DNA of 64,000 bases from Isurus oxyrinchus (lineage: Eukaryota), in assembly GCA_026770705.1 (NCBI GenBank), contig JANJGN010000018.1:40610001-40674000 (forward strand), given 5' to 3'. The position numbers and the translations under genes are program-made. Below the pieces are notes generated by a model that was not told where the DNA came from, made no database searches, and saw only the letters and a program-made list of their open reading frames with translations. Positions within the stretch are counted from its first letter, which is position 1, and each line of letters opens with the position of its first letter. Shown here piece by piece: positions 899 to 46,139 of the stretch.

Positions 899-2410
899 AT
901 CATTGCTGTTGTCAGTCCCTTCAGATGAAGATGATGTCTGCCAGCCTTCAAGATTTGTGTGTTCTCAGGTGACTCCAATCCTGGAGCCACAGGTCTTTGG
1001 GCAGAAAGGACAAGAGTTGCTCCAAGTAAAAAGAGTTTTCTTGAGCCAGGGTTCTGCTCTCTTTCCTTCCACTTTCATTGTTTTTCTGCAGCAGAGTTTA
1101 TGCAGCAGTTCCTGACTGTGTTGCAGCTTATTGGATGAGGCACCACAACACAGCACAATTAACGACAAATTCCTTCCGTGCACCAATGTCAATTTGTTCC
1201 CTTTTCAATAAAGCCTTCAGAGTGTCCTTAAAATGTTTTCTCTGCCTTCCTTGAAATTGGGTGGCATTTAAGTTTGAAAAGAGGATCTGCTTCAGATGCG
1301 GTGTCTGGGTGAGTGGAGCTGATTTCGCATGATTGTGGTTGCAATGCTGGAGGAATTGGCTTTGGTGAGAATGCCAGAGCTTGTTCATCTGTATAAAAAC
1401 AAAAAACTGCAGATGCTAGAAATCCAAAACAGAATTACCTGGAAAAACTCAGCAGGTCTGGCAGCATCGGCGGAGAAGAAAAGAAAAGAGTTTGAGTTCT
1501 GTTGAAGGGTCATGAGGACTCAAAACGTCAACTCTTATCTTCTCCGCCGATGCTGCCAGACCTGCTGAGTTTTTCCAGGTAATTCTGTTTTTGTTTTGTT
1601 CATCTGTATTCCCACTTGACTTTGAGTATTCTGCAGAGACACTGTTGGTGGGGATTCTCCAGTGATCAGAGACTTTGGAAGGTAGCCCAAGTCTCACTGC
1701 CATATAGAAAGTTGGTGACTAAAGCTTTTGCCCTCTTACGAAGATCTCTATTGTCAAAGACCCGCTTGTGCAATTTTTGGAAGGTGCAGCAGCACAGCCA
1801 ATTTGGTGCTGGATCTCCCCTTTGATGGTGACCTTTTGAGAAAGGTAGCTCCCAGGATCTGGGAAGTGTTCAAAACTTCTTAAATTCTCCCCATCAATAA
1901 CAACAGTTGGAGGTGTGGATGCTTGAATGGAGGAGGGCTGGTGGAGGATTTTGGTCTTGCTGATGTTGATTGAGGGATTAACCCTTTTGTATGCAGAGTT
2001 GAAGAGTTTGAGGATGGCCTGAACGTCGTTTGCAGTGTGGGCCACAACTCTGCAGTTGTTGGCATATTTTAAGTCAAGGCTCTCAGCTTGATGAGGTTGA
2101 AAAGCTTCTCATTGAATTGAAACTCATATTATGAGCGCCTGTGAAAATTGGTCATGAATGAGTTCCATGACCAGGCTGAGGTAAATAGTAAAGAGTTGGT
2201 GCAATAATACATCCTTCTTTGATGCCTGTCCATATGTGAAAGGACTTGGTCTCTAATCCATTGCAAAGGATGGTTGCTGTGATGCAATCATACAGAGTGG
2301 ATAGTAACAAATTTTGCTGGTCACCAATCTCTAGAGGACTTTCCAAAATGCTTCACAGGTGATGGAGTCAAAGGCCTTTAACTGATCAAGAAAGGCCATG
2401 TAGAGTTCTA
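899..2410 (-). mobile_element. RTE-clade LINE remnant (RT and 3' end)
   Basis: Degenerate minus-strand peptides GIKEGCIIAPTL, HTANDVQAILKLF...INISKTKILHQ, RQRKHFKDTLK; boundaries approximate. Confidence 0.7.
1395..1595. mobile_element. Fold-back (inverted) PLE pLTR insertion
   Basis: Two inverted pLTR 3' segments. TSD ttgttcatctgtat at 1381-1394 and 1596-1609; interrupts an RTE-like LINE remnant. Confidence 0.88.
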
Positions 2411-4934
2411 GTTATTCAAAATACTTGCGAACTAGATGTAAATGTTAACATTATGAAACCCATATGGTCTGTAAAGGTGGACTGAATATATTTGTGGCTG
2501 AAAAAAATGGCATATTAAACCACTTGATTTATATTAGAAATTTGTGGCAGAACTTGGTACAGCCATCATCAACAGCATGAAAAATAAGGGGCCTTAATAA
2601 CTCCTAACAAAGTAGGGGATTTTCAAATGACACTTTAAAAGTAATGCATTGAAAATATTCCCCTACACTTATTTTCTTTAAGACAGCATTGCTAATTGTC
2701 AGCTTTAAAGTATGTTTTAAACAATAGTCTTCTGCTCATCCCTTACAGTTTGGCAACATTTATATATATATTTTTAAAAAGGCAAAGAAAGCACTGCCTC
2801 TACCCAAGACCTTCCAGTTTGTATCTTGTGATAATGATAACTAGGGATGGTGCTTAACAAATGTCCATACCCAATTTAAGCAACACAGCTGAAAGAATTG
2901 TTCTTGTTGATTCAGTTTAACGTTTTTTGAACGTGTTAGTTTAAATCCTTTTGATGCAGATTTGGTATTATTACTGAGGGATTTGGTTGGGAGATTTACT
3001 GAGTCTTATAGCTGAATTAATACGTTTTGAGATAGATTTAACAATTCAAGACACTTCGGTGATGTTGCTGTTTGAACTGTGTATGATTATTTAGGTCAGA
3101 CATGGTGGTAACTCTTGCCAGTTAGTTTCCAGACATTAGGTCATCAGCATGATTACTGAAACAGAGACTCAAACAAGAAAACAAAGGAATAGGCAACGTA
3201 GCATAAGAAGGACGACAGTATTTTCCCATTCTTGCAGTCATTTTCTCCCCTGGTTTAAGGTACAGTAGTGGCTTGTTCTTTGGCATGGTTTTGTGGGAAT
3301 TGTTGTGGTGCCTGCATGCCATTGTCCTGTAATGGTCCTCAGCAGAGCAAGGGTTAACATGGGACTGGAGAATAGCACCACCCATGGTATGATGTATAGC
3401 GTTACATGGTAATGGACTGAGAGAACAGCTTACAGAGAACACTCTGGAAGCAGCTACCTGCATGATGAACAGCACCATGTATGACAGTAATCTGGGATCT
3501 GTCAATAGTTCAAGACTACCAATAAAGGGTTCATGTTTAAACATACAAGTCTCAAAATCTCATCAATGAGCCACAACAGCTGATCACCCATAGTACAACA
3601 TGGCTGGCAGTGGTAGGAGCGCCTAAAATATATACAGCAGCGGTAATATGAAAGGTGGCAGCATTTTAAGCAATGAATCCAGAACAATTTCCCAAGGTAA
3701 GCAAAACTAAAAACAACTGAAGGCGAACCAGAGAACCTAAGAAGAAAACTTGAAGAAACAATTGAAGAACCTTTGCTACAAACTTAGTAGTTGAGCAATC
3801 CACCGGGGTGAGTGGAAGCCTATTGCAAGACCCATGTGTAATGCAGAGGAAAAATGGAAAAACAACCAGGTCAACTCACAAAGGTGGGTGAGCAGAAATA
3901 CAAAAGTTGCAAGATCCTGAGCGATGCTGATTTAAGACACTTAGTTAGATCGCAAGATGGTGCACAATTCTACAAAAATTGCAAGACCCTGAGTGATGCA
4001 GTGTAAAGAACAGTTTCGAGACAGTGGGCAAAAATGATAAAAAGCTGTATTTACTCTATAGAATAGGTGGCAGTCCCAACGCTCAGCAAATCCATAGAGA
4101 AACTGAAAGACAGCTGCAGTAAAAAAAGGAAAAAGCCTGCAGAGTTTAGGAGAAAGGGAGACCTTTTCAGTTGGGGTCCTGGCTTCTTATATAGAAGAAA
4201 AAATTGCTGCAGTTTAAAATTTTTTTAAAAAGGCCCATGATCAGGGTGATCCCAAAAAAGTGTAAGAGAAACACACAGACAGAACTGATGGCTGCAGACA
4301 GCCCTCAGAGGAAAGAACCCCTTAGAAAAGATGTGCTTCTACCTTGAAAGTTTAGAAGTGTAAAAAAAGTCCCACAATTGCTGGAGAGCCTACCAAAACT
4401 GAAAAGGGCGCAGGAAACTCAAAGCACAGAAAGCTGACAGCCACAGAGTGAAAAAAACGGTTACTTCACTGACAGTCATAAAGCAGTAACGACATTTAAA
4501 GTGATAACTACAGGCCATGGACAGCAAATTAGAAGAGCCAGATGTATTTCTGCTATGGAAAGGGCTAAACCAGACCCAAAAATGGGCGTCTTGGAGAAGA
4601 TAATTTTTAGTGTATAGGAGAAGTACAAGATTAAATAAGGAATCAGAAAAAGTACAATTTGATGAGTTTTTATTCATGTTTGGTTTATTTGCTGGTGAAG
4701 TACTCTATAGCCAACATACAATACCCTTGGTGAGATATTAATATGCTTCAACAGATATTTTAAAGTCCAAGTTATGGAGAAGGTCTAACATACCACACAA
4801 CATTGAGGGCGACGAGACCCCTGAGAGAAGGCAGTTTCTAATAAAGCACCAAGGGCAACAAAACACCCCAGAGAGAGGGCAACTCCCGATAAAGGTGCTG
4901 AGTGCAGCAACAGGTTCAAGAGAAAGGGCAAAAA

Positions 4935-5078
4935 AGAAACCCTGGAGTGACAGAGCCAAAAGACCCCAGAATGAGTGCAACAAGAGACTCCAGAGGGAGG
5001 CCAACAAAAGACTCCAGAACGAGGGTGACAGACAACCCCAGAGAGAGGGAGCCAGAAGACCCCAGGGCAAGGGAGGGA
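4935..5078 (+). repeat. Six degenerate 24-nt tandem units inside the LTR element
   Basis: agaaaccctggagtgacagagcca, aaagaccccagaatgagtgcaaca, agagactccagagggaggccaaca, aaagactccagaacgagggtgaca, gacaaccccagagagagggagcca, gaagaccccagggcaagggaggga. Confidence 0.8.
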
Positions 5079-5149
5079 GACGGCAGTGTGGAGCGTGCAG
5101 ATGGATCTGTACGAAGGAAAGCTCAGAAGAAGCAAAAGGTGCCAAATGT

Positions 5150-5405: not shown

Positions 5406-6296
5406 GTAGAAAAGGCACTCAAAGAGGTTGTAAGAACAGTCTAGAGAGAACACTCTGGAAGCAGCTACCTGCATGATGAATAGCATCATGCATGACAGTA
5501 ACCTGGGATCTGTAATTAGTTAAAGACTACCAATAAAGGGTTCATGTTTAAACAGACAAGTCTCAAGAACTCATCAAAGAGCCACAACAGTCGATCACCC
5601 ATAGTACAACAGGCATCAACCACTTCCCAAGTGGACATTACACCCGTGTGAGCTTAAACATGGAATAATTTATCTTTGAAGGTGTCACATGGGAACCTGA
5701 TCACAACCTCACCTGACATTCACGCTGTCATCAGGTGTCAGTAAACATCAGAAAGGAAGAGGGGCTGTAGTGCATTTTTACCTTGCCCAGCCCAGAAGTG
5801 AAGATATTTTAGCACATTGCTGTTGCTCTTACTAAGGCAATTTATTTGTTTCCCAGTTTAAAACAGCTTAGCTACCCAGATAATCTCAAAGAACTGGTTA
5901 TGAAATATTAAAGAGACTAGATTGTGTAGTGAACACTATTCCGTAGTGCTTCGAAAGAGAGCAGGACCTGCTACCAACTAGGGCAAAGATAACCATGTAA
6001 AAGAGGTAGCCCCTTATAATATAAATCAGAGTCAATGAGATCTCCTGAAGTAGTTTTAATTGCCTAAACAGGGTAGGAGAGGAGTTTTCCAGATTTTCCT
6101 ATCTAATGGCCTAGGTTTTTATTCTGGCAATGACTTGGCTCCAAGTGGGTAGAGGCTGTCTGTATCGTGATGCAAATCAGATCTATATAGGCCAGAGATA
6201 AAAACAAAGAAAACTGCGGATGCTGGAAATCCAAAACAAAAACAGAATTACCTGGAAAAACTCAGCAGGTCTGGCAGCATCGGCGGAGAAGAAAAG

Positions 6297-6333
6297 AGTT
6301 GACGTTTCGAGTCCTCGACCCTTCGACAGAACT
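6297..6333 (-). ncRNA. Hammerhead motif in 3' pLTR of the left arm (2-nt shorter loop II)
   Basis: Reverse complement reads agttctgtcgaagggtc-gag-gactcgaaacgtcaact. Confidence 0.65.
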
Positions 6334-6714
6334 TGATTTCGAGTCCAAGAAAGAGTTGAAATATAAGTTGGTTTAAGGTGTGTGGTGTGGGGGGGGCGGA
6401 GAGATAGAGAGAGAGAGAGGTGCTTGTGCAGACAAACAAGCAGTGATAGAAGTAGATCATCAAAAGATGTCAGCGACAATGGTACAAAAGAACACAGAGG
6501 TGTTAAAGTTAAAGTTGGTGATATTATCTAAACGAATGTGCTAATTAAGAATGGATGGTAGGGCACTCAAGGTACAGCTCTAGTGGGGGTGGGGGGAGCA
6601 TAAAAGATTTTAAAATATTTTAAAATAATGGAAATAGGTGGGAAAAGAAAAATCTATCAAATTTATAGGGGAAAAAGGGGGAAACAGAAAGGGGGTGGGG
6701 ATGGGGGAGGGAGC

Positions 6715-9471
6715 TCACGACCTAAAGTTGTTGAATTCAATATTCAGACCGGAAGGCTGTAAGGTGCCTAGTCGGAAGATGAGGTGTTGTTCCTCCAGTT
6801 TGCGTTGGGCTTCACTGGAACAATGCAGTAAGCCAAGGACAGACATGTGGGCAAGAGAGCAGGGTGGAGTGTTAAAATGGCAAGCGACAGGGAGGTTTGG
6901 GTCATTCTTGCGGACAGACCGCAGGTGTTCTGCAAAGCGGTCGCCCAGTTTACGTTTGGTCTCTCCAATGTAGAGGAGACCACATTGGGAGCAACAAATG
7001 CAGTAGACTAAGTTGGGGGAAATGCAAGAGAAATGCTGCTTCACTTGAAAGGAGTGTTTGGGCCCTTGGACGGTGAGGAGAGAGGAAGTGAAGGGGCAGG
7101 TGTTACATCTTTTGCGTGGGCATGGGGTGGTGCCATAGGAGGGGGTTGAGGAGTAGGGGGTGATGGAGGAGTGGACCAGGGTGTCCCGGAGGGAGCGATC
7201 CCTACGGAATGCCGATAAGGGGGGTGAAGGGAAGATGTGTTTGGTGGTGGCATCATGCTGGAGTTGGCGGAAATGGCGGAGGATGATCCTTTGAATGCGG
7301 AGGCTGGTGGGGTGATAAGTGAGGACAAGGGGGACCCTATCATGTTTCTGGGAGGGAGGAGAAGGCGTGAGGGTGGATGCGCGGGAGATGGGCCGGACAC
7401 GGTTGATGGCCCTGTCAACGACCGTGGGTGGAAAACCTCGGTTAAGGAAGAAGGAGGACATGTCAGAGGAACCGTTTTTGAAGGTAGCATCATCGGAACA
7501 GATGCGACGAAGGCGAAGGAACTGGGAGAATGGGATGGAGTCCTTACAGGAAGCGGGGTGTGAGGAGCTGTAGTCGAGGTAGCTGTGGGAGTTGGTGGGT
7601 TTGTAATGGATATTGGTGGACAGTCTATCACCAGAGATTGAGACAGAGAGGTCAAGGAAGGGAAGGGAAGTGTCAGAGATGGACCACGTGAAAATGAAGG
7701 AGGGGTGGAGATTGGAAGCAAAATTAATAAATTTTTCCAAGTCCCGACGAGAGCATGAAGTGGCACCGAAGTAATCATCGATGTACCGGAGAAAAAGTTG
7801 TGGAAGGGGGCCGGAGTAGGACTGCAACAAGGAATGTTCCACATACCCCATGAAGAGACAGGCATAGCTGGGGCCCATGCGGGTACCCATAGCCACACCT
7901 TTTATTTGGAGAAAGTGAGAGGAGTTGAAGGAGAAATTGTTCAACGTGAGAACAAGTTCAGCCAGACGGAGGAGAGTAGTGGTGGATGGGGATTGTTCGG
8001 GCCTCTGTTCGAGGAAGAAGCTAAGGGCCCTCAGACCATCCTGGTGGGGGATGGAGGTGTAGAGGGATTGGACGTCCATGGTGAAGAGGAAGCGGTTGGA
8101 GCCAGGGAACTGGAAATTGTTGATGTGACGTAAGGTGTCAGAGGAATCATGGATGTAGGTGGGAAGGGACTGGACAAGGGGAGAGAGAAGGGAGTCAAGA
8201 TAACGAGAAATGAGTTCTGTGGGGCAGGAGCAAGCTGAGATGATTGGTCTACCGGGGCAGTTCTGTTTGTGGATTTTGGGTAGGAGATAGAAGCGGGCCG
8301 TCCGAGGTTGGGCGGCTATCAGGTTGGAAGCTGTGGGAGGGAGATCCCCAGAGGAGATGAGGTCAGTGACAGTCCTGGAAACAATGGCTTGATGTTCAGT
8401 GGTGGGGTCATGGTCCAGGGAGAGGTAGGAGGAAGTGTCTGCGAGTTGACGCTCAGCCTCCGCGAGGTAGAGGTCAGTGCGCCAGACAACAACAGCACCA
8501 CCCTTGTCAGCGGGTTTGATGACAATGTCAGGGTTGGACCTGAGAGAATGGAGTGCAGTAAGTTCAGAGAGAGACAGGTTAGAATGGGTGAGAGGAGCAG
8601 AGAAATTGAGACGACTAATGTCGCGCCGACAGTTCTCAATGAAAAGATCAAGAGAAAGTAAGAATCCAGAGGGAGGGGTCCAGGTGGAGGGAGAATATTG
8701 GAGATGGGTAAAAGGATCGGTTGAACTGGGAGAGGACTCCTGCCCAAAGAAGTGAGCCCGGAGACGAAGACGGCGAAAGAAGAGTTCAGTATCATGCCGA
8801 GCCCGAAATTCATTGAGGTGAGGGCGTAAGGGTATGAAACTAAGTCCTTTGCTGAGCACTGAACGTTCAGCATCAGAGAGGGGAAGGTCAGGGGGTATAG
8901 TGAATACACGGCTGGGGCTGGGATTGGAAGATGAGGTGGGGACGGAGGGACAGGCTGGGGTGGAGGGTCCTAGATGGGTGTTGGTGTCGATGAGTTGTTG
9001 GAGCTTGCATTCCTTAGCAGTTGAGAGAAAGAGAAAAAGTTTCTTGTTGAGGCGTCGGATGAGCCGAAGGATAAAATGAAACTGGGGGCACGCGCAGCTT
9101 TGAAAAAGGGTACGGCGGTGCTGCTGGAGGGAGAGGTCGAGTGTGTTCATATGGCGGCGCATGGCACTGAGTGTGGATTTCAGAATGTGACGGGAACAGC
9201 AGTCTGAGAAACGTTTTATGTCCCGGAGATACCGGTAATCCTGGGTGCGTTCGAAAGATGAGGGGTGGAATTTCAGTTGAAATCCGCATGGGGTAAGTCG
9301 GAGACGGAGACAGTCACTGAGAAAGGAGATATGGCTGTGAAAGCGGGTTTTAGTAAACGCCTTGTCAAACACCAGGAGGGAAATGGAAAGCAAAGAAGGT
9401 GAACAAGGCAACAGAGAGATACGGAAATCTTGTCGCAGAGAGGAACAGAACTTCTTCAAGGAGGTAGGCAT
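6715..9471 (-). CDS. PLE polyprotein: reverse transcriptase + Cys linker + GIY-YIG endonuclease (intact, 918 aa from first ATG)
   Basis: Uninterrupted ORF with IKPADKGG, FYLLPKIHK, FTMDVQSLYT, GVAMGTRMGP, LRYIDD, FLDL, CPRKRCNTC linker, LVYC..C..C..LYIGET...R..EH and C-terminal GLN. The ORF-track start at 9495 is TTG. Confidence 0.93.
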   Translation of the reverse strand: MPTSLKKFCSSLRQDFRISLLPCSPSLLSISLLVFDKAFTKTRFHSHISFLSDCLRLRLTPCGFQLKFHPSSFERTQDYRYLRDIKRFSDCCSRHILKSTLSAMRRHMNTLDLSLQQHRRTLFQSCACPQFHFILRLIRRLNKKLFLFLSTAKECKLQQLIDTNTHLGPSTPACPSVPTSSSNPSPSRVFTIPPDLPLSDAERSVLSKGLSFIPLRPHLNEFRARHDTELFFRRLRLRAHFFGQESSPSSTDPFTHLQYSPSTWTPPSGFLLSLDLFIENCRRDISRLNFSAPLTHSNLSLSELTALHSLRSNPDIVIKPADKGGAVVVWRTDLYLAEAERQLADTSSYLSLDHDPTTEHQAIVSRTVTDLISSGDLPPTASNLIAAQPRTARFYLLPKIHKQNCPGRPIISACSCPTELISRYLDSLLSPLVQSLPTYIHDSSDTLRHINNFQFPGSNRFLFTMDVQSLYTSIPHQDGLRALSFFLEQRPEQSPSTTTLLRLAELVLTLNNFSFNSSHFLQIKGVAMGTRMGPSYACLFMGYVEHSLLQSYSGPLPQLFLRYIDDYFGATSCSRRDLEKFINFASNLHPSFIFTWSISDTSLPFLDLSVSISGDRLSTNIHYKPTNSHSYLDYSSSHPASCKDSIPFSQFLRLRRICSDDATFKNGSSDMSSFFLNRGFPPTVVDRAINRVRPISRASTLTPSPPSQKHDRVPLVLTYHPTSLRIQRIILRHFRQLQHDATTKHIFPSPPLSAFRRDRSLRDTLVHSSITPYSSTPSYGTTPCPRKRCNTCPFTSSLLTVQGPKHSFQVKQHFSCISPNLVYCICCSQCGLLYIGETKRKLGDRFAEHLRSVRKNDPNLPVACHFNTPPCSLAHMSVLGLLHCSSEAQRKLEEQHLIFRLGTLQPSGLNIEFNNFRS

Positions 9472-9572
9472 TTCTTGAAGAGCAGTGGCAGTCAATTAAA
9501 CACAGAGATAAAAACAAAGAACACACACCTTAAACCAACTTATATTTCAACTCTTTCTTGGACTCGAAATCA

Positions 9573-9611
9573 AGTTCTGTCGAAGGGTCATGAGGACTCG
9601 AAATGTCAACT
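9573..9611 (+). ncRNA. Hammerhead motif in 5' pLTR of the right arm (stem III C>T)
   Basis: Same motif but gaaaTgtc instead of gaaaCgtc, which breaks the ACGT palindrome. Confidence 0.6.
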
Positions 9612-9746
9612 CTTTTCTTCTCCGCCGATGCTGCCAGACCTGCTGAGTTTTTCCAGGTAATTCTGTTTTTGTTTTGGATTTCCAGCATCCGCAGTTTTCT
9701 TTGTTTTTATCTCTGTGTTTAATTGACTGCCACTGCTCTTCAAGAA

Positions 9747-12503
9747 ATGCCCACCTCCTTGAAGAAGTTCTGTTCTTTTCTGCGACAAGATTTCCGTATC
9801 TCTCTGTTGCCTTGTTCACCTTCTTTGCTTTCCATTTCCCTCCTGGTGTTTGACAAGGCGTTTACTAAAACCCGCTTTCACAGCCATATCTCCTTTCTCA
9901 GTGACTGTCTCCATCTCCGACTTACCCCACGTGGATTTCAACTGAAATTCCACCCCTCATCTTTCGAACCCACCCAGGATTACCGGTATCTCCGGGACAT
10001 AAAACGTTTCTCAGACTGCTGTTCCCGTCACATTCTGAAATCTACACTCAGTGCCATGCGCCGCCATATGAACACACTCGACCTCTCCCTCCAGCAGCAC
10101 CGCCGTACCCTTTTTCAAAGCTGCGCGTGCCCCCAGTTTCATTTTATCCTTCGGCTCATCTGACGCCTCAACAAGAAACTTTTTCTCTTTCTCTCAACTG
10201 CTAAGGAACGCAAGCTCCAACAACTCATCGACACCAACACCCATCTAGGACCCTCCACCCCAGCCTGTCCCTCCGTCCCCACCCCATCTTCCAATCCCAG
10301 CCCCAGCCGTGTATTCACTATACCCCCTGACCTTCCCCTCTCTGATGCTGAACGTTCAGTGCTCAGCAAAGGACTTAGTTTCATACCCTTACGCCCTCAC
10401 CTCTATGGATTTCGGGCTCGGCATGATACTGAACTCTTCTTTCGCCGTCTTCGTCTCCGGGCTCACTTCTTTGGGCAGGAGTCCTCTCCCAGTTCAACGG
10501 ATCCTTTTACCCATCTCCAATATTCTCCCTCCACCTGGACCCCTCCCTCTGGATTCTTACCTTCTCTTGATCTTTTCATTGAGAACTGTCGGCGCGACAT
10601 TAGTCGTCTCAATTTCTCTGCTCCTCTCACCCATTCTAACCTGTCTCTCTCTGAACTTACTGCACTCCATTCTCTCAGGTCCAACCCTGACATTGTCATC
10701 AAACCCGCTGACAAGGGTGGTGCTGTTGTTGTCTGGCGCACTGACCTCTACCTCGCGGAGGCTGAGTGTCAACTCGCAGACACTTCCTCCTACCTCTCCC
10801 TGGACCATGACCCCACCACTGAACATCAAGCCATTGTTTCCAGGACTGTCACTGACCTCATCTCCTCTGGGGATCTCCCTCCCACAGCTTCCAACCTGAT
10901 AGTCGCCCAACCTCGGACGGCCCACTTCTATCTCCTACCCAAAATCCACAAACAGAACTGCCCCGGTAGACCGATCGTCTCAGCTTGCTCCTGCCCCACA
11001 GAACTCATTTCTCGTTATCTTGACTCCCTTCTCTCTTCCCTTGTCCAGTCCCTTCCCACCTACATCCGTGATTCCTCTGACACCTTACGTCACATCAACA
11101 ATTTCCAGTTCCCTGGCTCCAACCGCTTCCTCTTCACCATGGACGTCCAATCCCTCTACACCTCCATCCCCCACCAGGTTGGTCTGAGGGCCCTTAGCTT
11201 CTTCCTCAAACAGAGGCCCGAACAATCCCCATCCACCACTACTCTCCTCCGTCCGGCTGAACTTGTTCTCACGTTGAACAATTTCTCCTTCAACTCCTCT
11301 CACTTTCTCCAAATAAAAGGTGTGGCTATGGGTACCCGCATGGGCCCCAGCTATGCCTGTCTCTTCATGGGGTATGTGGAACATTCCTTGTTGCAGTCCT
11401 ACTCCGGCCCCCTTCCACAACTTTTTCTCCGGTACATCGATGATTACTTCGGTGCCGCTTCATGCTCTCGTCGGGACTTGGAAAAATTTATTAATTTTGC
11501 TTCCAATCTCCACCCCTCCATCATTTTCACGTGGTCCATCTCTGACACTTCCCTTCCCTTCCTTGACCTCTCTGTCTCAATCTCTGGTGATAGACTGTCC
11601 ACCAATATCCATTACAAACCCACCGACTCCCACAGCTACCTCGACTACAGCTCCTCACACCCCGCTTCCTGTAAGGACTCCATCCCATTCTCCCAGTTCC
11701 TTCGCCTTCGTCGCATCTGTTCCGATGATGCTACCTTCAAAAACGGTTCCTCTGACATGACCTCCTTCTTCCTTAACCGAGGTTTTCCACCCACGGTCGT
11801 TGACAGGGCCCTCAACCGTGTCCGGCCCATCTCCCGTGCATCCGCCCTCGCGCCTTCTCCTCCCTCCCAGAAACATGATAGGGTCCCCCTTGTCCTCACT
11901 TATCACCCCACCAGCCTCCGCATTCAAAGGATCATCCTCCGCCATTTCCGCCAACTCCAGCATGATGCCACCACCAAACACATCTTCCCTTCACCCCCCT
12001 TATCGGCATTCTGTAGGGATCGCTCCGTCCGGGACACCCTGGTCCACTCCTCCATCACCCCCTACTCCTCAACCCCCTCCTATGGCACCACCCCATGCCC
12101 ACGCAAAAGATGTAACACCTGCCCCTTCACTTCCTCTCTCCTCACCGTCCAAGGGCCCAAACACTCCTTTCAAGTGAAGCAGCATTTCACTTGCATTTCC
12201 CCCAACTTAGTCTACTGCATTCGTTGCTCCCAATGTGGTCTCCTCTACATTGGAGAGACCAAACGTAAACTGGGCGACCGCTTTGCAGAACACCTGCGGT
12301 CTGTCCGCAAGAATGACCCAAACCTCCCTGTCGCTTGCCATTTTAACACTCCACCCTGCTCTCTTGCCCACATGTCTGTCCTTGGCTTACTGCATTGTTC
12401 CAGTGAAGACCAACGCAAACTGGAGGAACAACACCTCATCTTCCGACTAGGCACCTTACAGCCTTCCGGTCTGAATATTGAATTCAATAACTTTAGGTCG
12501 TGA
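9747..12503 (+). pseudogene. PLE polyprotein, full length with one premature stop
   Basis: Same length (2757 nt) and colinear with the left copy. TGA at 10161-10163 where the partner has CGA (CpG transition); the ORF-track pieces 9723..10163 and 10359..12503 share one frame. Confidence 0.92.
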
Positions 12504-12880
12504 GCTCCCTCCCCCATCCCCACCCCCTTTCTGTTTCCCCCTTTTTCCCTATAAATTTTATAGATTTTTCTTTTCCCACCTATTTCCATTATTTTAAAAT
12601 ATTTTAAAATCTTTTATGCTCCCTCCACCCCCACTAGAGCTGTACCTTGAGTGCCCTACCATCCATTCTTAATTAGCACATTCGTTTAGATAATATCACC
12701 AACTTTAACTTTAACACCTCTGTGTTCTTTTGTACCATTGTCGCTGACACCTTTTGATGATCTGCTTCTATCACTGCTTGTTTGTCCACACAACCACCTC
12801 TCTCTCTCTCTATCTCTCCGCCCCCCACACACACACCTTAAACCAGCTTATATTTCAACTCTTTCTTGGACTCGAAATCA

Positions 12881-12919
12881 AGTTCTGTCGAAGGGTCATG
12901 AGGACTCGAAACGTCAACT
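12881..12919 (+). ncRNA. Minimal type I hammerhead ribozyme in PLE pLTR (variant core)
   Basis: agtt-CTGTCGA-a-gggtc-atgag-gactc-GAAA-c-GTC-aact: stem I agtt/aact, stem II gggtc/gactc, palindromic ACGT mini stem III, GUC cleavage triplet. Hammerheads are an established feature of PLE pLTRs. Confidence 0.75.
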
Positions 12920-14678
12920 CTTTTCTTCTCCGCCGATGCTGCCAGACCTGCTGAGTTTTTCCAGGTAATTCTGTTTTTGTTCTATATAGGCCAGGCTTGA
13001 CAAATCAATATTTTTTTCATGTTATTTCTGTATATTTTTGATTACCACAAGAGAGATCAAGGATTAAAACAGGGACCTTCCTGGTCTAGTTAAAACTTGC
13101 CTTTATCAATTGAGCCTTTACATTTTGATCCTCTTTTCAAAGAATACTCCCACATGTGCATGAGTGAGAATAGATATGAACAGTATTGTCAATATTGTCT
13201 TTTCTTAGCCATAAAATGTATGTGGCCGGTTTGCAAAATCCTTGTCAATTATCTTGTTTATTTTTATAAAATCTTGCTTCATTAAAAACATAATAACAAA
13301 GTGCATTTACATTTTAGAATTAGACTGTTGAGCCTCATCTCTGTAAATGCTAATTTGTTAATTTGTTGAGCGCTCCATATTAAGTGACTTCTGGAGTCAG
13401 CAAAAACTTCATATATCCCTTTTATTTGTTACTGAGAAATGGAATGTTTCAGAATGAATTAGTAGATGTGCTGCAGCATAACTCTTTATTTAATCAGTTT
13501 ATCTGTGTCTCATTGATATTGCAGTAACATAATGGAAAAAACCTTTTTTGTGAGTGTGGAATAGTGACAATGAAACCCTTTCTCCAAAGAAATCAGTCTT
13601 TTTTTCTATAATGAAATCTGGAAAAAAGTTGTTTTGGTTTCTTTTTCTAGAAGTTCTTGTATCCTGTGGCTTCTGTCAATGCAAGACCACAGAGTGAGAC
13701 TGGAATTTGTTCTGAGCAAAAGAGGTTGAAGCTGGAGCCAACAAAGCACCAGAGGGAGTTGATGTTCAACATTTTCCAGTTTGGTGAAGCAATGCAAATG
13801 GATTTAGGCTATGGCACAACTGGAGACAGAAAATGGTGACTGTGGCAATGACTGCAGCCCAGATAATTCTCTTCCACTAACAGCTGGATTTCGGCGAGCT
13901 GGTGCTGAGGCTGTTAGTAAAGAGCACAGCAGCTTTGCTTTTTCTGTGTATTTTCACCTGGTCTTGTCCTTCACTGCAGCACTAATGTCACATGCTAATA
14001 CTTTAGGTTCATGCTTTAGGTATTGGCTTGTTGGCTTTGGAGAGGCAGGAATTAAAGAACACATAAAATGAAGATGATAGTACACTTACCTTGGAGCTGA
14101 ATCACTCAAAGGACCCAGTCAGCAAAATGTCAAACAAATGAAAGGTGGCAAGTGCTCACATCAGTTCCACCTCCTAGATTATAGCCATGAAAATGACAGC
14201 CAACACCAGGGTTCAAATGCAGAATTGTCGCATATCGCAAATGCACTGGTGCTGAAAATAACACTAGCATGAAATCCCTTGGAAAATGTTAATTAGACTT
14301 TAAAATATAATTAGGTACACATGTTCTGTCAGGGAAGAGAATCTGTAAAATATCACTCTCTCTTGGTCCTGAGCTAATTTAAATAGATGTTCAGGTGGCT
14401 GACACTGGCCATCACACATCACAGAGTAAGACATGAATTCATTCCCCACCATGCCTGCTTTTCATCTCTTTTTAAATTCTATACCACTCCTTGACCAAGA
14501 AGAGGACATAAACCTCTGCTAATGCATTCATCAAGAGAGATATATGGCTTGTGTTTAGATTTACCCTCCTGTGCTACTAATAAGGCACCTAGCCACCACT
14601 GCACAGTATGTTCTTTGTAAGCATGCAAGGATTAGAAGTTTATTCTGTACTTGAAAGGAACAAATGTAGGTTCAATAC

Positions 14679-30504: not shown

Positions 30505-31429
30505 ATTTCTTTGCACTTGTTGCACTGCTACATCACTGTATCTTACACAGTTTTTTTGTGCAAAACTGATGATAATTTATTAGAAATATATAAAAAAAGC
30601 CTTTCATAATGATTTTCAACTCTACTTCCTAAATGAGATAATTATCCAATAGAAGTGCAAAGCAGTGTACCACAATTTTGGGTCAAAATCCTGGAACTCC
30701 CTTCTTTATAGCACTGTGGGTGTACCTATATGACATGGACTGCAGTGGTTCAAGAAGGCAGCTCACCACCACCTTCTCAAGGGCAACTAGGAATGGGCAA
30801 TAAATGCTGGCCCAGCCAGCAAAGTCCACATCCCGTGAATGAATAATAAAAATAAAAAAATTCTGTTTGGGTAGTGATTTTAAGTTAATCTGTATATGTA
30901 AGGCATTATAAAAGTTGAAATGAAAACTTGCCACCATTTCCTGCTGTTTGCACACCGTTCCTCAGACTCCATTAGTGTTCAGCCTAAGTGCCTTTCTGTA
31001 GAGTCTTTAGGGATCAGAACCAAAATTCTACAGAGTGCTGGAAACACTAATGATTTGTGCTGTCAAGACTGAAACCAGATCTTGCACCCGAGTGAGGGAG
31101 GAATTAAACAAAGTGTTGTGTCCATTGCTCTGTTCAAGATAACTGGGGAAAATGATATCTGTTAATAAGTGTCAAGTAACCTGATCTTAGGTAGAATGAT
31201 GATCAGTATGGAAATTGCAAATTTAATATTAATAGTTTAGAAATAATTTATAAGATATGAAAAAAATATTTTTAATTAAATGCTCAATTCAGATTCTATT
31301 TTAATTTAGAACAGAAAATGTGAGTAATTCATAGCAGGACAGGCTGTAAATGTGGAGAGAACAGGTAAGTTAACATTTTGGGTATGGATCCTTCATCAGA
31401 ACTAAAAGATATGACAAATAAACAAAATT

Positions 31430-31765: not shown

Positions 31766-32016
31766 CATGTCTTGTGTGTGAAGAGTTATCAGAAGCACAT
31801 GATGTTGATGTAACTATGAATATAATGTCACATGCCTAAGTAACGGAGATCTGGAGAGAGAAGTCCAAGCTCATGCAGAGTTCCCAAAATGTACATTGAG
31901 CTGTAAATAAATAATAATGGTTTTAACAAACTAATGTCTTGAGTAGCTCACGTAGGGAAAGTAGACCAACCCCAAAGAACCCCATCTAGACTTCAAACAC
32001 ATGATGAAACAATGCG

Positions 32017-32178
32017 AAACAAAAACGGAATTACCTGGAAAAACTCAGCAGGTCTGGCAGCATCGGCGGAGAAGAAAAGAGTTGACGTTTCGGCACCGAT
32101 GCTGCCAGACCTGCTGAGTTTTTCCAGGTAATTCTGTTTTTGTTTTGGATTTCCAGCATCCGCAGTTTTATTGTTTTT
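32017..32178. mobile_element. Fold-back PLE pLTR insertion
   Basis: Inverted pLTR segments. TSD atgaaacaatg(c/t)g at 32004-32016 and 32179-32191. Confidence 0.87.
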
Positions 32179-32549: not shown

Positions 32550-33320
32550 AATAGGAAATATATACATGGCACACAACGGTGAGTGTTATGAATAGAAAAG
32601 TTTCGCTGAAAGTGAAAGGAAGAAACTACGAGACAGTTGTGGCCTTGTTATCTAGTGCAGAAACCTGGACAACATCAAGAAGAGAGGAACAACGAATGGA
32701 TACTAATGAGATGTGGATGCTAAGATGGATGTGTAGAGTAACGAGACGGGATAAAATCAGGAGTCAGCACATCAGGGGGTTAGTGATGACAGTGGGAGCA
32801 TTGAAGAAAGTAGCAGGGAAAACGTTGAAATGGTATGTCACCTGTTGCAAGACAGAGGGAAAGGAAATGTGGTGAAACAAAACAGAAAATGCTGGAAAAA
32901 CTCAGCAGATCTGGCAGCATCTGTGGAGAGAGAAACAAAGTTAACGTTTTGAGTCTGTATGACCCTTCTTCAGAAGGGTCTGAAGCTCTGAAGAAAGGTC
33001 ATACGCACTCAAAACATTAACTCTTTCTCTCTCCACAGATGCTGTCAGACCTGCTGAGTTTTTCCAGCAATTTCTGTTTTTGTTACAGATTTCCAGCACC
33101 CGCAGTGTTTTGCTTTTATCTACAGAAATGTGGTGAGGACAGTGACGGAGATGGGACTGCCAGGAAGAAGGAGAAGAGGAAGGCCCATGATGAGATGGAA
33201 AGATGGTGAGAGATTTAAATCATTTGGAAGAGTAATAGGTGACTGATAGGAGGACGTGGAGAAGGGTGATCAATCAGCATTGTGGTGACCCTAAGTAAAG
33301 TAGGAGAAGCCAAAAGAAGA
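32550..33320 (+). mobile_element. RTE-clade LINE 3' remnant
   Basis: KVKGRNYETVV...AETW...EMWMLRWMCRVTRRDKIRSQHIR, then GRRRRGRP..RW.D after the pLTR insertion. Confidence 0.7.
32876..33124. mobile_element. Fold-back PLE pLTR insertion, related older subfamily (CTGAAGA core)
   Basis: Inverted arms ...aaactcagcagatctggcagcatctgtggagagag... / ...ctccacagatgctgtcagacctgctgagtttt... TSD gaaatgtggtga at 32864-32875 and 33125-33136. Confidence 0.85.
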
Positions 33321-38180: not shown

Positions 38181-39442
38181 TTGTCTGCCTTATAGGATGC
38201 TTTGGTGTCTATTTTACATCTGTAAAACGCTGTAGTTTCATCACATTTCTCTGCTTATAAGTGTCTTGGAAGTTCCCCCTGTGATGTTTCTCAACCTCTT
38301 TCTTCTTCTTCTCACTGTGCTTCTGGAATGCTGAACTCATGCATTATTTCTGCTGCCCAGGAAAGATTTTGAGATAAATGCCTTCAAATCAAATAAGACC
38401 CATTCAGCATTGTGAATAAACATATGCTTTGTTAAAGATGATTTGAAAATATTTGAGAACACCTAACGAATGACTCAAGATTTTAAGAGTTAAAGATCCT
38501 CCATTCTGTGTGATTCTGATGAATGGCTCAGAGAAGAACATTCATTACAACTAATGCACAGTGACTCTAATTACTGCTGTGAAAGAACAGTGAAAACATT
38601 AATGGCCACTGGCTCCATTCAATCCTACTTGCAGGAAATGAGCTTTGACGCAAAGCTGACTTTAGAACCTCAAGGGACAGCTACATTTAAGACTGAAGTA
38701 GATGATGGAGATGGGAGCGACTGGAAAGAAAGAAATGAAGTCTAAACTACGGAGCATAGGGAAAGGGAGAGTCTGACTAACAAATAAAAAATAAGTTTTT
38801 ACGTTCTTTGAAGCTTTTAAAGAAGCTTCATTATGGTAGAAAAGGGAGGATATCTGGATGGCATTTACTGATGCAAAACAAACAAACCAGTGCATTCTGT
38901 GTGATGTAGTAATGTTCTGAAACAAATTGTCTGTGTTGGAAAACAAATGCAGGCACCTGCTAAATACTATTCCAATAAACAACGCGTCTTAGTTTTCTGA
39001 TAGCTCAGCATATTTACCTAATAAATAATTGAGCAATTGAAGGCCCACATATAACCTTCCGTTGTGCTGAGCTAGCTGATCTCAGCCAATGTGCAGGTAG
39101 AAGCTCTGTGTATCAGCCAAGGGTCAGTTGATAGCATTCTTGCTTTGGAGTCAAGGGGTTGTGGTTTAACCCCTGGGCTGACACCCTTGTGTGATACTGA
39201 CAAAGTGCTACATTGTCAAAAGGTGCCCTCTTTTGGATGAAATGTTAAACCAAGGCCCCATCTACTCTCTCAGCTGGATATAAAAAATGAGCAGGGAACT
39301 TTTCCCTGGTCTCCTGGCCAATATTTATTCCTCAGTCAATACCACTGTGAAAAATAATCACTGTTGTCTGGGAGAGCTTGCTCTGTAGAAATTGGCTGCT
39401 GCATTTCTTACATTACAACAATGGCCAGACTTCAAAAGTACT

Positions 39443-39573
39443 GAAGAAGAGTTGTACGAACTTGAAACTTTAACTCTGTTCCTCTCCCCACAGATGCTGA
39501 CAGACCTGCTGAGTTTTTATGCATTTTCTGTTTTTATTTCAGATTTCCAGAATCCGCAGTATTTTGCTTTTAT
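39443..39573 (+). mobile_element. Solo PLE pLTR (older subfamily) inserted in a DeuSINE-like element
   Basis: ctgaagaagag...gaaactttaactctg...cagatgctgacagacctgctgag...ccgcagtattttgctttta. TSD cttcaaa(a/c)gtact at 39430-39442 and 39574-39586. Confidence 0.75.
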
Positions 39574-39941
39574 CTTCAAACGTACTTCACTGGCTGTAAT
39601 GCAGGAGATTATGAAAAGTGCTTTCTTTCTTTTGGAGTGGTTTTAATGTACCTGAATTAGGGAGGGGAAAATAACTGGGGTTCTTTTGCCTATCACTATC
39701 CAAACCAAACTGGAGGTGTGTACATTCATACCCACGTTGGGTAAATATGGGACCAGCCTTGGAATCACATTCAACAGCCTACAAATTCTCACTGTCAAGA
39801 TTCGCACACGCATAATAGCCTCTCTGGGCAAGATATCATAGTGCAATCTAGCACCTGGAAACTACTTTAACAAGTAATAGATGCCTTCAAGAGAGAGGAG
39901 AAAAATCTGGCAGAAGGAAACGGTGCATTTTTAAAATGTAT

Positions 39942-43790: not shown

Positions 43791-45307
43791 TCACAATTGT
43801 GTCAGAATTAGCATTTCCTGGTTAAAGGGTAGTTATTGTTAAATCAACATAATATGCAAACTAACTCCTTTTATTCTGGTTTTGCTCTGATTTATCCAGA
43901 AGCTGCCAAAATGTGGGCCTATACATACTGTGGTTTACTAAGTTCATCCGTTTAATTCGCTGCAATGGCTGTGTTGAGGCAGGGCGCTCTTTGTGCTACT
44001 CTTTACATTTAAGTAAAAGATACTACTGAAGAGTTTGCTGCATTGAGGGCAGTTAATCTTATTTTTTAAAAAAATGCTAATTCAATTGTGATTCAGTATA
44101 AACTTATTACAGTAAACATTGCTTTATTTTTTTAGCCTGAGCTACACAGTCTGCTAATATTGTGCATTTCATTGGTTTGGAGAGATCACATAATGGTAGG
44201 CAAATTTATTTCCAGTGTGTATCCCAATAATAGAAAAGTTAATTGTTCACCTCCTGGCAACACCATCCAGTCTAGATAAAATCAAGCTTCAATTCATAAG
44301 AAATGTGAAGTTACCTATGGATGCTGACTGCTGTATTGACCGTGAATAACAAACTGTGGAAAAGGATACATTTACACTACGGCTGAGTGAACTGTTTCGA
44401 TTAGGCTGCTGCTTCATGGGGACATTTAATTTGCAATTCTTATTTCAAGCAAAGAGAAGATGCAAGCCTGGAAGTGATTATGAGAAATGTTACAATAACA
44501 TGTTCATATCAAATTCTATTTTAACGGAGGTATTCACTCACAAAAAATGGGTGGATGTTGTAGATAGCATAAAATCATGGCACAAGCAATTAAGGGTAAA
44601 TATATTCATAAATGCAGTTGCTGCCACATTGTCACTGACTTTAAAATGGTGAATTATAAAGTTAGCTCTTTAAAAAATAATGCTTGGGCTTCACTGCTTT
44701 TGGTTCTGGATTTGAACTGCAATTGAAGTATAAATGATAATTGGAGATTCAGTTTCCAAATTTATCAGCAACTGAAAAGGACAGGTAGAAATTCTGATGG
44801 GTAAGTGGGCAGGGGCTCTCTTTCCCTTCATCTCAGCACATTACTTTAATATTATTGTCTAATTCGTCCATCTAATCTTTTTGAAAAGCTGAAGTCAGAG
44901 CACTTTCAATAAAAGCATGTCAGTGTGAAGTACTTTCATAAGCCTTTTCATTACTTCACAGAAGACTCACATACTTTCATGCAAAGAAATTAAAAATCTG
45001 ACATTAATACCATAATGTTTTGCTGATTTTGTGAAAGTAAAGCTTCTATCACTTTTAGGGAAAAGATGAAAGGCAAAAACATCAAAGGGAAATGTTCTCA
45101 ATTTGAACACTGACTAGTGATTTTCAGTCAAACATTTTGGTCTGATTTTGTTTGCGTCTGTATGAGTAATATAACTGATATCAGAAGCTGCAGGCAGATC
45201 AGTGAGATCTTGCAGACTGGGTCATCACTACAGCGTCTATTTGGTGAGCAAAAGCTGTGTCACTCAAAATCAATAAGTTCTTATTATAAGCACATGCTTT
45301 TTAATAA

Positions 45308-45555
45308 AAACAGAATTTCCTGGAAAAACTCAGCAGGTCTGGCAGCATCGGCGGAGAAGAAAAGAGTTGACGTTTCGAGTCCTCATGACCCTTCGACAGA
45401 ACTTGAGGAACTTCATCAAGTTCTGTCGAAGGGTCATGAGGACTCGAAACGTCTACTCTTTTCTTCTCCGCCGATGCTGCCAGACCTGCTGAGTTTTTCC
45501 AGGTAATTCTGTTTTTGTTTTGGATTTCCAGCATCCGCAGTTTTTTTTTGTCTTT
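45308..45555. mobile_element. Fold-back PLE pLTR insertion with two inverted hammerhead motifs
   Basis: ~100-bp near-perfect inverted arms around spacer ggaacttca. TSD tgctttttaataa at 45295-45307 and 45556-45568; hammerhead motifs at 45365-45403 (-) and 45419-45457 (+). Confidence 0.9.
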
Positions 45556-46139
45556 TGCTTTTTAATAAGATTGCTGCATAACAGCAAAACTCTAGTTATA
45601 AAAATTAGTTGGTGAGCTTTTAGCCCCTGTGACATTACTTGAGTTTCATTTCTCCTAAAAGGGCAATTCTGGTCCAAATTACCCCCTTCCTTTAATTCTA
45701 CATCTTTTTTTCCAAGTATGTTCTGGATCTGATAACTGGGCCATATTAAACTTTACGAAGAGTTAATAGAAACAAACAGATGCTTATGTAACCATGGGAA
45801 AGTTTTTTTTAAGTTTCCTCATAAACTGATAAGAGCTGCATCACAAAGCAACAATATTTCCACATAGCCTAAAGCAACCTTGACAGTATGATAACTGCAA
45901 CGTAGCTCTGATTAGATTCTTTGAATTTAAAATATGAAACAACATTAGTTGCAGAGAAAGACTACTTGTGACAAAAAGCATCCTAACTAGAGGCACTGCT
46001 GCATCAAATCAACTTCTTTGTCTGCCTGAAAGGGAACACAATGATTTCTGGAATCGCTCTGCAGTTATTCCAAGCTACTGAAAGATTACACACTGTTAAT
46101 TCTTTGAGGGACAATAAAGATTTGTGGACAGTTACTTAC

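What the first reader, a model, noticed from the sequence alone, without database searches (positions are those of the whole stretch)
1381..45568. Five of five inverted PLE insertions pair a long-tailed arm with a short arm, inside a 12-14 bp TSD
Seen: in the insertions at 1395-1595, 6196-12980, 32017-32178, 32876-33124 and 45308-45555, both 3' ends point outward. One arm always stops at ...(a)ttctgtttt(tgtt), and the other always runs ~35-45 nt further through the tail (gatttccagcatccgcagtttt...ttttat). The long arm is on the left in two cases and on the right in three, and the rule holds in both the young and the older subfamily. Established: PLEs have a 3' tail beyond the pLTR and often show inverted segments. 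Inference: both 3'-OH ends of a 12-14 nt staggered GIY-YIG cut prime reverse transcription at two fixed, adjacent RNA start sites, and the two cDNAs are then joined 5' to 5'. Insert size would then range from ~160 bp to 6.8 kb depending only on processivity.
Basis: partly seen in the sequence, partly recalled or inferred. Interest (0 to 1): 0.8.

Follow-up and report, generated by a model that had tools for sequence, protein, structure and literature searches.

The report
Penelope twin insertions, one-sided tail
Five jumping-gene insertions in this window are pairs of Penelope-like element ends facing outward, one with a roughly 30-40-base tail and one without; this is a published hallmark of these elements, and only the strictness of the pairing may be new.

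Summary
All 5 head-to-head Penelope-like (PLE) insertions in the window sit inside one exact 11-14 bp target duplication. In each, one arm runs to the tail end and the other stops 30-41 nt earlier in a T-rich tract. An unbiased census found no long/long or short/short twin.

Reads of a related species show the same two end classes genome-wide, with the short class about 0.29 of listed ends. Under independent choice, 5 of 5 mixed pairs has p of about 0.01-0.03.

Frangieh et al. 2024 showed in vitro that a PLE protein cuts and extends both strands, and starts reverse transcription at two adjacent internal RNA sites with the tail between them. Earlier papers describe the tail as present at one end of inverted pLTRs.

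Only the strict one-long-one-short pairing was not found in print. "Size set only by processivity" is not supported, because inner ends pile up 139-140 nt from the tail end. Earlier notes of this scan report the same asymmetry on other DNA of this genome.

The parts
1381..1394 (.). I1 target site duplication, left copy (14 bp; right copy at 1596-1609)
   Evidence: Exact repeat found by script; sequence read.
1395..1500 (-). I1 long arm: pLTR 3' part plus tail. Its inner end is about 120 nt from the tail end. It has a 6-nt deletion at the short-site tract.
   Evidence: Alignment to the natural reference arm.
1495..1595 (+). I1 short arm: ends in the T-rich tract with no tail. Its inner end is at the hot spot, about 140 nt from the tail end. 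It overlaps the long arm by about 6 nt at the centre.
6182..6195 (.). I2 target site duplication, left copy (14 bp; right copy at 12981-12994)
6196..9520 (-). I2 long arm. In sense order it holds 14-16 nt of an upstream tail, then the body with an intact 918-aa ORF (6718-9471), then the pLTR and the tail.
   Evidence: Pfam RVT_1 at 2.8e-8; GIY-YIG at 1.2e-3, which is below the curated cut-off.
9521..12980 (+). I2 short arm: about 150 nt of an upstream pLTR, then the tail (to 9713), the body and a pLTR that ends without a tail. It is more than one unit long. It reaches about 177 nt further 5' than the long arm. Its ORF is broken (longest ORF 714 aa).
32004..32014 (.). I3 target site duplication, left copy (11 bp; right copy at 32179-32189)
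32015..32092 (-). I3 short arm; inner end 114 nt from the tail end
32093..32178 (+). I3 long arm with tail; inner end about 89 nt from the tail end
32864..32875 (.). I4 target site duplication, left copy (12 bp; right copy at 33125-33136)
32876..32975 (-). I4 short arm (older subfamily); a 7-nt spacer at 32976-32982 follows it
32983..33124 (+). I4 long arm with tail (older subfamily)
45295..45307 (.). I5 target site duplication, left copy (13 bp; right copy at 45556-45568)
45308..45406 (-). I5 short arm; an 8-nt spacer at 45407-45414 follows it
45415..45555 (+). I5 long arm with tail
28821..30508 (+). Single-arm, 5'-truncated copy with a long tail and a 12-bp TSD (28809-28820 and 30505-30516). 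Used as the reference for the reads.
53230..53345 (+). Single-arm copy that ends at the short site with no tail. Its inner end is at the hot spot.
39420..39575 (+). Single-arm older copy with tail. A 13-bp flank repeat with one mismatch was seen by eye.
   Evidence: The script found no exact repeat.
59167..59303 (-). Single-arm older copy with tail; TSD not resolved

Best explanation
These are ordinary integration products of an endonuclease-bearing Penelope-like retrotransposon (reverse transcriptase plus C-terminal GIY-YIG).

The proposed steps are:
1. The element's protein nicks the two target strands 11-14 bp apart.
2. Each exposed 3'-OH primes reverse transcription on element RNA at one of two internal start zones. 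The short zone (S) lies in the U-rich tract at the end of the pLTR. The long zone (L) lies 30-41 nt downstream, at the end of the tail.
3. The 3' ends of the two cDNAs are joined head to head, by a template jump or by microhomology.
4. Filling in leaves one target duplication around the whole twin.

Shown here:
- the anatomy;
- the two end classes, in the window and genome-wide in a related species;
- that both start zones are internal to a longer RNA. In I2 the tail lies between an upstream pLTR and the body, and the short arm is more than one unit long;
- that in 3 of 5 twins neither arm could have been copied from the other.

Taken from print (Frangieh 2024, in vitro, another PLE): both strands are cut and extended, there are two adjacent RT start sites, and the tail lies between them.

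My inference for the strict pairing, at about one in three: the short site is primed first. The long site, still single-stranded on the same RNA, is primed second and trails behind. If the long site is primed first, no second site is left, and a single-arm tailed copy results. This predicts that twins are always long/short, that single-arm copies are mostly long, and that short arms reach at least as far 5' as long arms.
For: - One exact TSD per twin, 11-14 bp, in 5 of 5; control 2 of 2000.
- 5 of 5 twins are long/short, and the BLAST and nhmmer census found no other twin.
- Protein domains: RVT_1 at 2.8e-8, and GIY-YIG at 1.2e-3, below the curated cut-off.
- Reads of related organism B, 175,046 laid. 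Loose ends lie behind 30469 (2,616 reads) and 30471 (4,057 reads), which are short ends. Loose ends behind 30494 number 16,386; their loose letters continue with the rest of the tail and then T/A-rich flank, so these are long ends.
- I2 holds pLTR, tail and body contiguously inside the short arm.
- In I1, I2 and I3 the short arm has 20, about 177 and 25 nt more 5' sequence than the long arm, while the long arm has the tail.
- Clear single-arm copies are 3 long and 1 short.
- Published in vitro data and descriptions of the one-sided tail.
Against: - n is only 5. Short arm at least as long as long arm is informative in only 3 twins. In I4 and I5 the long arm reaches 1-3 nt further.
- Frangieh 2024 saw no start-site difference between strands in vitro. 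That neither supports nor excludes coupling within one event.
- A single short-ended copy exists (53230-53345).
- The two full-length arms of I2 differ at 48 of 3,272 aligned sites. They are no closer to each other than to an independent copy, so nothing shows a shared template RNA.
- GIY-YIG scores below Pfam's cut-off.
Confidence: 0.7

Rival explanations
1. Snap-back (self-priming). One cDNA is primed at the long site, folds back on itself and copies itself toward the target. Something bound to the tail stops the copy early, which gives the short arm. Pairing would then be automatic.
For: - In I4 and I5 the inner ends of the two arms coincide within 1-3 nt around 7-8-nt spacers.
- The best-supported opposite-strand joints in reads are symmetric: 30369/30369 with 78 reads and 30369/30370 with 74 reads.
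- Arkhipova 2013 argued for self-priming from palindromes at inverted junctions (passage seen).
Against: - In I1, I2 and I3 the short arm carries 20, about 177 and 25 nt of genuine element sequence that the long arm lacks. The short arm therefore cannot be a copy of the long arm.
- The long arm's tail cannot be copied from the short arm.
- Symmetric joints are also what two run-off cDNAs ending at one RNA 5' end would give.
Confidence: 0.1
2. Each nick picks its start site independently, as the in vitro data suggest, and 5 of 5 mixed pairs is chance.
For: - Frangieh 2024 found no difference in start site between top and bottom strands.
- Single-arm copies use both sites.
- The window alone gives only p of about 0.012-0.031.
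Against: - 5 of 5 here with unbiased ascertainment.
- Several earlier notes of this scan on other DNA of the same genome report the same asymmetry: 7 insertions, 8 of 8, and 3 palindromes. These are unchecked leads, not support.
Confidence: 0.1
3. The short twins are copies of pre-formed fold-back (hairpin) non-autonomous elements. The asymmetry would then be inherited, not made anew at each insertion.
For: - The mode of about 245 bp (I4 is 249 bp, I5 is 248 bp).
- Recurrent identical joints in reads.
- Earlier notes speak of a family of fold-back mini-elements (unchecked).
Against: - The five twins have five different centre junctions and sizes from 164 bp to 6.8 kb, in two subfamilies.
- A hairpin RNA would need a transcript that starts exactly at the element's short end.
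Confidence: 0.05
4. Endonuclease-mediated resolution. The tail difference arises when the element's nuclease cuts the intermediate at the pLTR/tail boundary on one side. This is the suggestion of Craig et al. 2021.
For: Craig 2021 states that the tail most likely results from EN-mediated resolution (passage seen). Frangieh 2024 recounts that the D. virilis EN needs the tail sequence for recognition.
Against: - Frangieh 2024 mapped the two ends to RT start sites directly.
- Short ends here are ragged over about 8 nt in a T-rich tract, with small overlaps to the target. That fits priming better than a sequence-specific cut.
Confidence: 0.05

Closest known systems
PAc, a Poseidon-type Penelope-like element of Anolis carolinensis (Frangieh et al. 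2024, PMC11167929; main text read)
   Same: - RT plus GIY-YIG protein.
- Both target strands are cut and extended.
- Reverse transcription starts at two adjacent internal RNA sites.
- The 30-40 nt tail is the sequence between the two sites.
- The template is a multi-copy RNA.
- The target is AT-rich.
   Different: - In PAc the start sites lie 111-118 nt inside the ORF, in an AC-rich stem-loop. Here they lie upstream of the ATG, in U-rich tracts.
- The paper reports no strand difference and does not address whether the two sites are used once each within one insertion.
- Its supplementary figures, which show genomic insertion ends, could not be opened.
Pen2a_Av and other Penelope families of Adineta vaga (Arkhipova et al. 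2013, PMC3846280; passages seen)
   Same: - Direct pLTRs plus an adjacent inverted pLTR inside one 8-10 bp TSD.
[quoted passage not shown]
- Short palindromes or overlap at the inverted junction.
   Different: The authors explain the structure by self-priming, possibly on an antisense template. They give no tally of long/short pairing.
General PLE architecture (Craig et al. 2021, PMC8557442; passages and the Fig. 2 legend seen)
   Same: - 5' truncation and partial tandems that form pLTRs.
- An inverted 5'-truncated copy next to the upstream pLTR.
[quoted passage not shown]
   Different: The wording is "often", not "always". The cause is attributed to EN-mediated resolution.
Twin priming of human L1 (Ostertag and Kazazian 2001; recalled, not read here)
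   Same: The second nick's 3'-OH primes on RNA instead of on the first cDNA, and the two cDNAs are joined by microhomology inside one TSD.
   Different: In L1 the second primer anneals further 5' on the RNA. The product is an inversion without duplication and has one poly(A) end. Here both arms carry the same 3' sequence, so that region was copied twice.

Membership tests
Endonuclease-bearing Penelope-like elements (canonical, C-terminal GIY-YIG) | Reverse transcriptase domain in a single ORF | tested here: met
   Pfam RVT_1 at E=2.8e-8 and 34.2 bits (cut-off 29.6), residues 402-572 of the 918-aa ORF 6718-9471(-). Assignment to a PLE clade was not tested.
Endonuclease-bearing Penelope-like elements (canonical, C-terminal GIY-YIG) | C-terminal GIY-YIG endonuclease | tested here: inconclusive
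   Pfam GIY-YIG at E=1.2e-3 and 19.5 bits, below the cut-off of 22.6, residues 821-855. No PDB sequence match for the C-terminal 161 aa at E up to 1. Position and motif fit by eye.
Endonuclease-bearing Penelope-like elements (canonical, C-terminal GIY-YIG) | Pseudo-LTR formed by a partial tandem copy | tested here: met
   The I2 short arm has its pLTR at 9521-9671 repeated at 12830-12980.
Endonuclease-bearing Penelope-like elements (canonical, C-terminal GIY-YIG) | Optional 30-40 bp tail beyond the pLTR, often at one end only | tested here: met
   The tail is 30-41 nt. It is present on one arm in 5 of 5 twins. Two end classes appear in reads.
Endonuclease-bearing Penelope-like elements (canonical, C-terminal GIY-YIG) | Inverted 5'-truncated copy joined head to head within one variable-length TSD | tested here: met
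   Five twins with TSDs of 11-14 bp.
Endonuclease-bearing Penelope-like elements (canonical, C-terminal GIY-YIG) | Hammerhead ribozyme motif in the pLTR | tested here: inconclusive
Rfam found no hit at gathering score on the window. It found no hammerhead hit at E up to 10 on 30300-30520 or 32860-33140. By eye there is a minimal hammerhead-like core. It is canonical in the older subfamily. In the young one, core position 6 is changed. Activity is unknown.
L1-type twin priming | The two segments are non-overlapping parts of one RNA: an inversion with no duplicated 3' end | tested here: not met
   Both arms of every twin contain the same pLTR 3' region.

The most novel reading that the evidence does not exclude
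Each Penelope twin insertion uses each of the two start sites exactly once, because both cDNAs are made on one RNA in a fixed order. The short site is primed first. The long site, still single-stranded, is primed second and trails by strand displacement. Priming at the long site first closes the option and gives a single tailed copy. That would be a coordinated two-primer mode of target-primed reverse transcription that I have not seen described for any other retroelement (from recall, not searched). It would explain twins, the one-sided tail and the excess of tailed single copies with one rule.
Probability: 0.3. Interest if true: 0.6.

Novelty: already known. Interest (0 to 1): 0.3.

Why it matters
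How Penelope-like elements integrate is still only partly worked out. Craig 2021 lists the complex tandem and inverted structures as unexplained. Frangieh 2024 leaves the steps after initiation as yet to be validated.

The structure and the two-start-site idea are already in print, so this window mainly adds a clean vertebrate example, apparently from a shark. What could matter is the strictness. That constrains models of the dimeric RNP and can be tested directly in the published in vitro system.

The fixed inner end at 139-140 nt suggests that many insertions are run-off copies of the RNA's 5' end. That would explain why tiny PLE fragments dominate such genomes.

Tried and rejected
- Rfam did not recognise any family. 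There was no hit at gathering score on the whole window. No hammerhead appeared at E up to 10 on a young copy or on I4. The hits on I4 were chance matches of miRNA precursor models to a long hairpin.
- Single-sequence RNA folding of pLTR end, tail and 5' UTR gave -33.7 kcal/mol with z=+0.94, and 162 of 200 shuffles fold as well. There is therefore no support for a special structure between the two start sites. I dropped that idea and ran no covariation test.
- I compared the two full-length arms of I2 with the independent copy at 28821-30508. Private differences were 12 (long arm), 10 (short arm) and 17 (third copy), with 1 site where all three differ. This star-like pattern cannot tell one RNA from two.
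- Pattern scans for more copies found 0 in metagenome contigs, 0 in viral contigs and 0 in prokaryote genome contigs.
- The sigma-70 promoter and terminator scan is a bacterial tool. It has no bearing here and found 0 and 0.
- PDB sequence search with the C-terminal 161 aa found 0 matches.
- Other inverted repeats in the window, at 53887-54504 and 47043-47319, are unrelated to the PLE and are not twins.
- Reads could not test pairing, because 151-nt reads do not reach both ends of a twin. Tables 5 and 7 show only the best-supported rows; 424 joints and 3,133 loose ends were not shown. The short-end share of 0.29 therefore rests on listed rows only.
- I did not run the large protein searches, because the family assignment did not need them.
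- Literature: two full-text searches. Frangieh 2024: main text read. Craig 2021, Arkhipova 2013, Lopez-Cortegano 2023 and Goubert 2022: passages seen. Schostak 2008: abstract only. None states an always-one-of-each rule. Supplements were closed, and Frangieh's Fig. S1-S2 on genomic ends may bear on this. [quoted passage not shown]


Full report
**What is there.** The window holds a young family and an older relative of a Penelope-like retrotransposon (PLE). The one full-length ORF (6718-9471, minus strand, 918 aa from the ATG) matches Pfam RVT_1 at 2.8e-8, above the cut-off. It matches GIY-YIG weakly at its C-terminus, at 1.2e-3 and 19.5 bits against a cut-off of 22.6.

BLAST of a natural pLTR-plus-tail stretch (9511-9713) against the window gave 15 arm matches at nine insertion loci. 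An nhmmer profile of the natural arms added three clearly weaker, older hits and one marginal hit at E=0.5 that I did not examine, and no further twin. The window has no N.

**The observation.** Five loci are head-to-head twins with both 3' ends outward: I1 1395-1595, I2 6196-12980, I3 32015-32178, I4 32876-33124 and I5 45308-45555.
- A script that looks for the longest exact repeat across the two boundaries found 14, 14, 11, 12 and 13 bp. Of 2000 random placements, 2 reached 10 bp or more.
- Alignment of every arm to a natural reference arm shows the split in each twin. One arm runs to within 0-4 nt of the tail end. The other stops in the T-rich tract at the end of the pLTR, 30-41 nt earlier.
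- The short ends are ragged over about 8 nt and the long ends over about 4-6 nt.
- The long arm is left in I1 and I2, and right in I3 to I5.
- I4 is of the older subfamily.

There are four clear single-arm copies:
- 28821-30508: long, with a 12-bp TSD.
- About 39420-39575: long.
- 59167-59303: long.
- 53230-53345: short.

There are also weak old hits at 47754-47870 (with tail), 31310-31404 (short-like) and 33751-33837 (unclear). The short site is therefore also used in single-arm insertions, and single-arm copies are mostly long.

**Is 5 of 5 more than chance?** If each arm chose its end independently, the chance of a mixed pair is at most 0.5, which gives 0.031 for 5 of 5. To estimate the real shares I laid reads on the single-arm copy 28700-30650.
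- A 2026 Illumina run of a related species (organism B) gave 175,046 reads at 90% likeness or better.
- Loose ends pile up behind 30469 (2,616 reads) and 30471 (4,057 reads). Both have random T/A-rich continuations. These are short ends.
- Loose ends behind 30494 number 16,386. Their loose letters continue with the rest of the tail and then T/A-rich sequence. These are long ends.
- The short share is thus about 0.29 on the listed rows; 3,133 further loose-end rows were not shown.
- Depth falls from about 39,100 (30416-30481) to a bin mean of about 4,600 (30482-30547), which fits a share of up to about 0.4.
- With p between 0.29 and 0.40, 5 of 5 mixed pairs has probability 0.012-0.026.

This is suggestive, not decisive. 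The reads confirm two discrete end classes genome-wide, but 151-nt reads cannot link the two ends of one twin. Two other species of the same study held the family in 2 reads each.

**Earlier notes of this scan.** Look-ups of the scan's own notes list several findings on other DNA of this genome that report the same asymmetry:
- s1-868623: seven insertions. Its follow-up judged this the published PLE hallmark.
- s1-897392: 8 of 8.
- s1-897007: three palindromes.
- s1-901384, s1-898401, s1-864285 and s1-900780.

I saw only their headline lines and could not check them. They are leads. No listed line mentions a long/long or short/short twin.

**Anatomy that bears on mechanism.**

(a) I2 shows what the tail is. 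Its plus-strand arm reads partial pLTR (9521-9671), tail (to 9713), body and pLTR, and ends without a tail.
- The tail is therefore the stretch between a pLTR and the next body in a tandem or multi-unit template.
- Both end classes are internal positions of a longer RNA, not its 3' end.
- This arm is more than one unit long.

(b) Inner ends, in nt from the tail end (I2):

| Twin | Long arm | Short arm |
|---|---|---|
| I1 | about 120 | about 140 |
| I3 | about 89 | 114 |
| I4 | 141 | 138 |
| I5 | 144 | 143 |
| I2 | (see right) | about 177 nt further 5' than the long arm |

- In I1, I2 and I3 each arm carries genuine element sequence that the other lacks: the tail on one, extra 5' sequence on the other.
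- Neither arm can then be a copy of the other. Both need their own template, which speaks against pure snap-back for these three.

(c) Centre junctions differ in all five. I1 has a 6-nt overlap, I2 has 0-2 nt, I3 has 0-1 nt, I4 has a 7-nt spacer and I5 has an 8-nt spacer. These are five separate events, not copies of one fold-back master.

(d) Inner ends are not spread as free processivity would give.
- By my reading, about 8 of the 14 arms of twins and clear single copies end within a few nt of one place, 135-144 nt from the tail end.
- In the reads, 3,688 loose ends lie before 30369.
- The best-supported opposite-strand joints are 30369/30369 (78 reads) and 30369/30370 (74 reads); 424 further joints were not shown.
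- A TATA-like heptamer lies at 30337-30343, 32 nt upstream. My inference is that the hot spot is the 5' end of pLTR-initiated RNA, and that the many insertions of about 100-140 nt, and the twins of about 245 bp, are run-off copies started at the promoter-proximal start sites. This is untested.

(e) The two 3.3-kb arms of I2 differ at 48 of 3,272 aligned sites (35 transitions and 13 transversions). They are as far from each other as from the independent copy at 28821-30508. This cannot tell one template RNA from two.

**What is known.**
- Frangieh et al. 2024 (main text read) purified an Anolis PLE protein. It cleaves and extends both target strands. Reverse transcription starts at two adjacent sites internal to the RNA and not homologous to the cut DNA. 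[quoted passage not shown] Start sites did not differ between top and bottom strands. The protein is predicted to be a dimer.
- Arkhipova et al. 2013 (passages) describe direct plus inverted pLTRs within one TSD. [quoted passage not shown] They favour self-priming to explain palindromes at the junction.
- Craig et al. 2021 (passages and the Fig. [quoted passage not shown]

What I did not find in the two full-text searches or in the texts I read is the statement that a twin always has one end of each kind. Frangieh's Fig. S1-S2 on genomic insertion ends may bear on this.

**Most likely mechanism.** This is dual target-primed reverse transcription from a staggered double nick, with one cDNA started in the short zone and one in the long zone, and the two cDNA 3' ends joined by template jump or microhomology.

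For the strictness I propose an order rule, as inference at about 0.3.
- Priming at the short site leaves the long site single-stranded on the same RNA for the second nick.
- Priming at the long site first converts the short site into RNA:cDNA hybrid. No second priming then follows, and a single tailed copy results.
- This predicts always-mixed twins (5 of 5), mostly long single copies (3 of 4 clear ones) and short arms reaching at least as far as long arms (3 of 3 informative twins, with two ties within 3 nt).
- None of these counts is significant alone.

**Rivals.** Snap-back is contradicted in 3 of 5 twins. Independent site choice has p of about 0.01-0.03. Inheritance from a hairpin master is contradicted by five different junctions. 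EN trimming is less consistent with the ragged T-rich ends and with the in vitro mapping.

**Verdict.** The feature is real and cleanly documented, and it is already known in kind and in mechanism. The strict pairing and the fixed inner end are modest additions worth a genome-wide tally. Interest is 0.3.

Noticed in passing
window 30369-30370 (equivalents: 1495, 53230, about 32975/32983, about 45406/45415): There is a hot spot for the inner (5') ends of arms, 139-140 nt from the tail end. Reads show 3,688 loose ends there, and the best head-to-head joints lie there too. A TATA-like heptamer sits 32 nt upstream at 30337-30343. The hot spot may be the transcription start of the pLTR, which would make the many tiny insertions run-off copies.
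   Followed up: partly
window 30371-30410; 32940-33010: A minimal hammerhead-like motif lies in the pLTR. By eye the older subfamily has the canonical core, and the young subfamily has core position 6 changed. Rfam gives no hammerhead hit at E up to 10.
   Followed up: partly
window 28700-30650, X1 contig joints (table 5c): Contigs of the source-like sample join a short end (30470) straight to a restart at 30370. They also join long ends (30503, 30506) to restarts at 30133 and 30253. These are head-to-tail partial tandems, including about 100-nt monomers.
   Followed up: no
window 6196-12980: The long (minus) arm keeps an intact 918-aa ORF. The short (plus) arm's ORF is broken, with a longest ORF of 714 aa from 10359. 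The arms differ at 48 of 3,272 sites.
   Followed up: partly
window 53887-54060 and 54331-54504: An inverted repeat with 174-nt arms, 98% complementary, lies 270 nt apart. It is unrelated to the PLE and its nature is not determined.
   Followed up: no
window 47043-47099 and 47263-47319: A 57-nt inverted repeat, 93% complementary, lies 163 nt apart. It is unrelated to the PLE.
   Followed up: no
reads laid on window 28700-30650: The family is very abundant in the related organism B, with 175,046 reads from about 3% of one run. It is nearly absent from organisms D and E of another study, with 2 reads each.
   Followed up: no
window 1430-1445: The long arm of I1 lacks 6 nt exactly in the T-rich tract where short arms end.
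   Followed up: no
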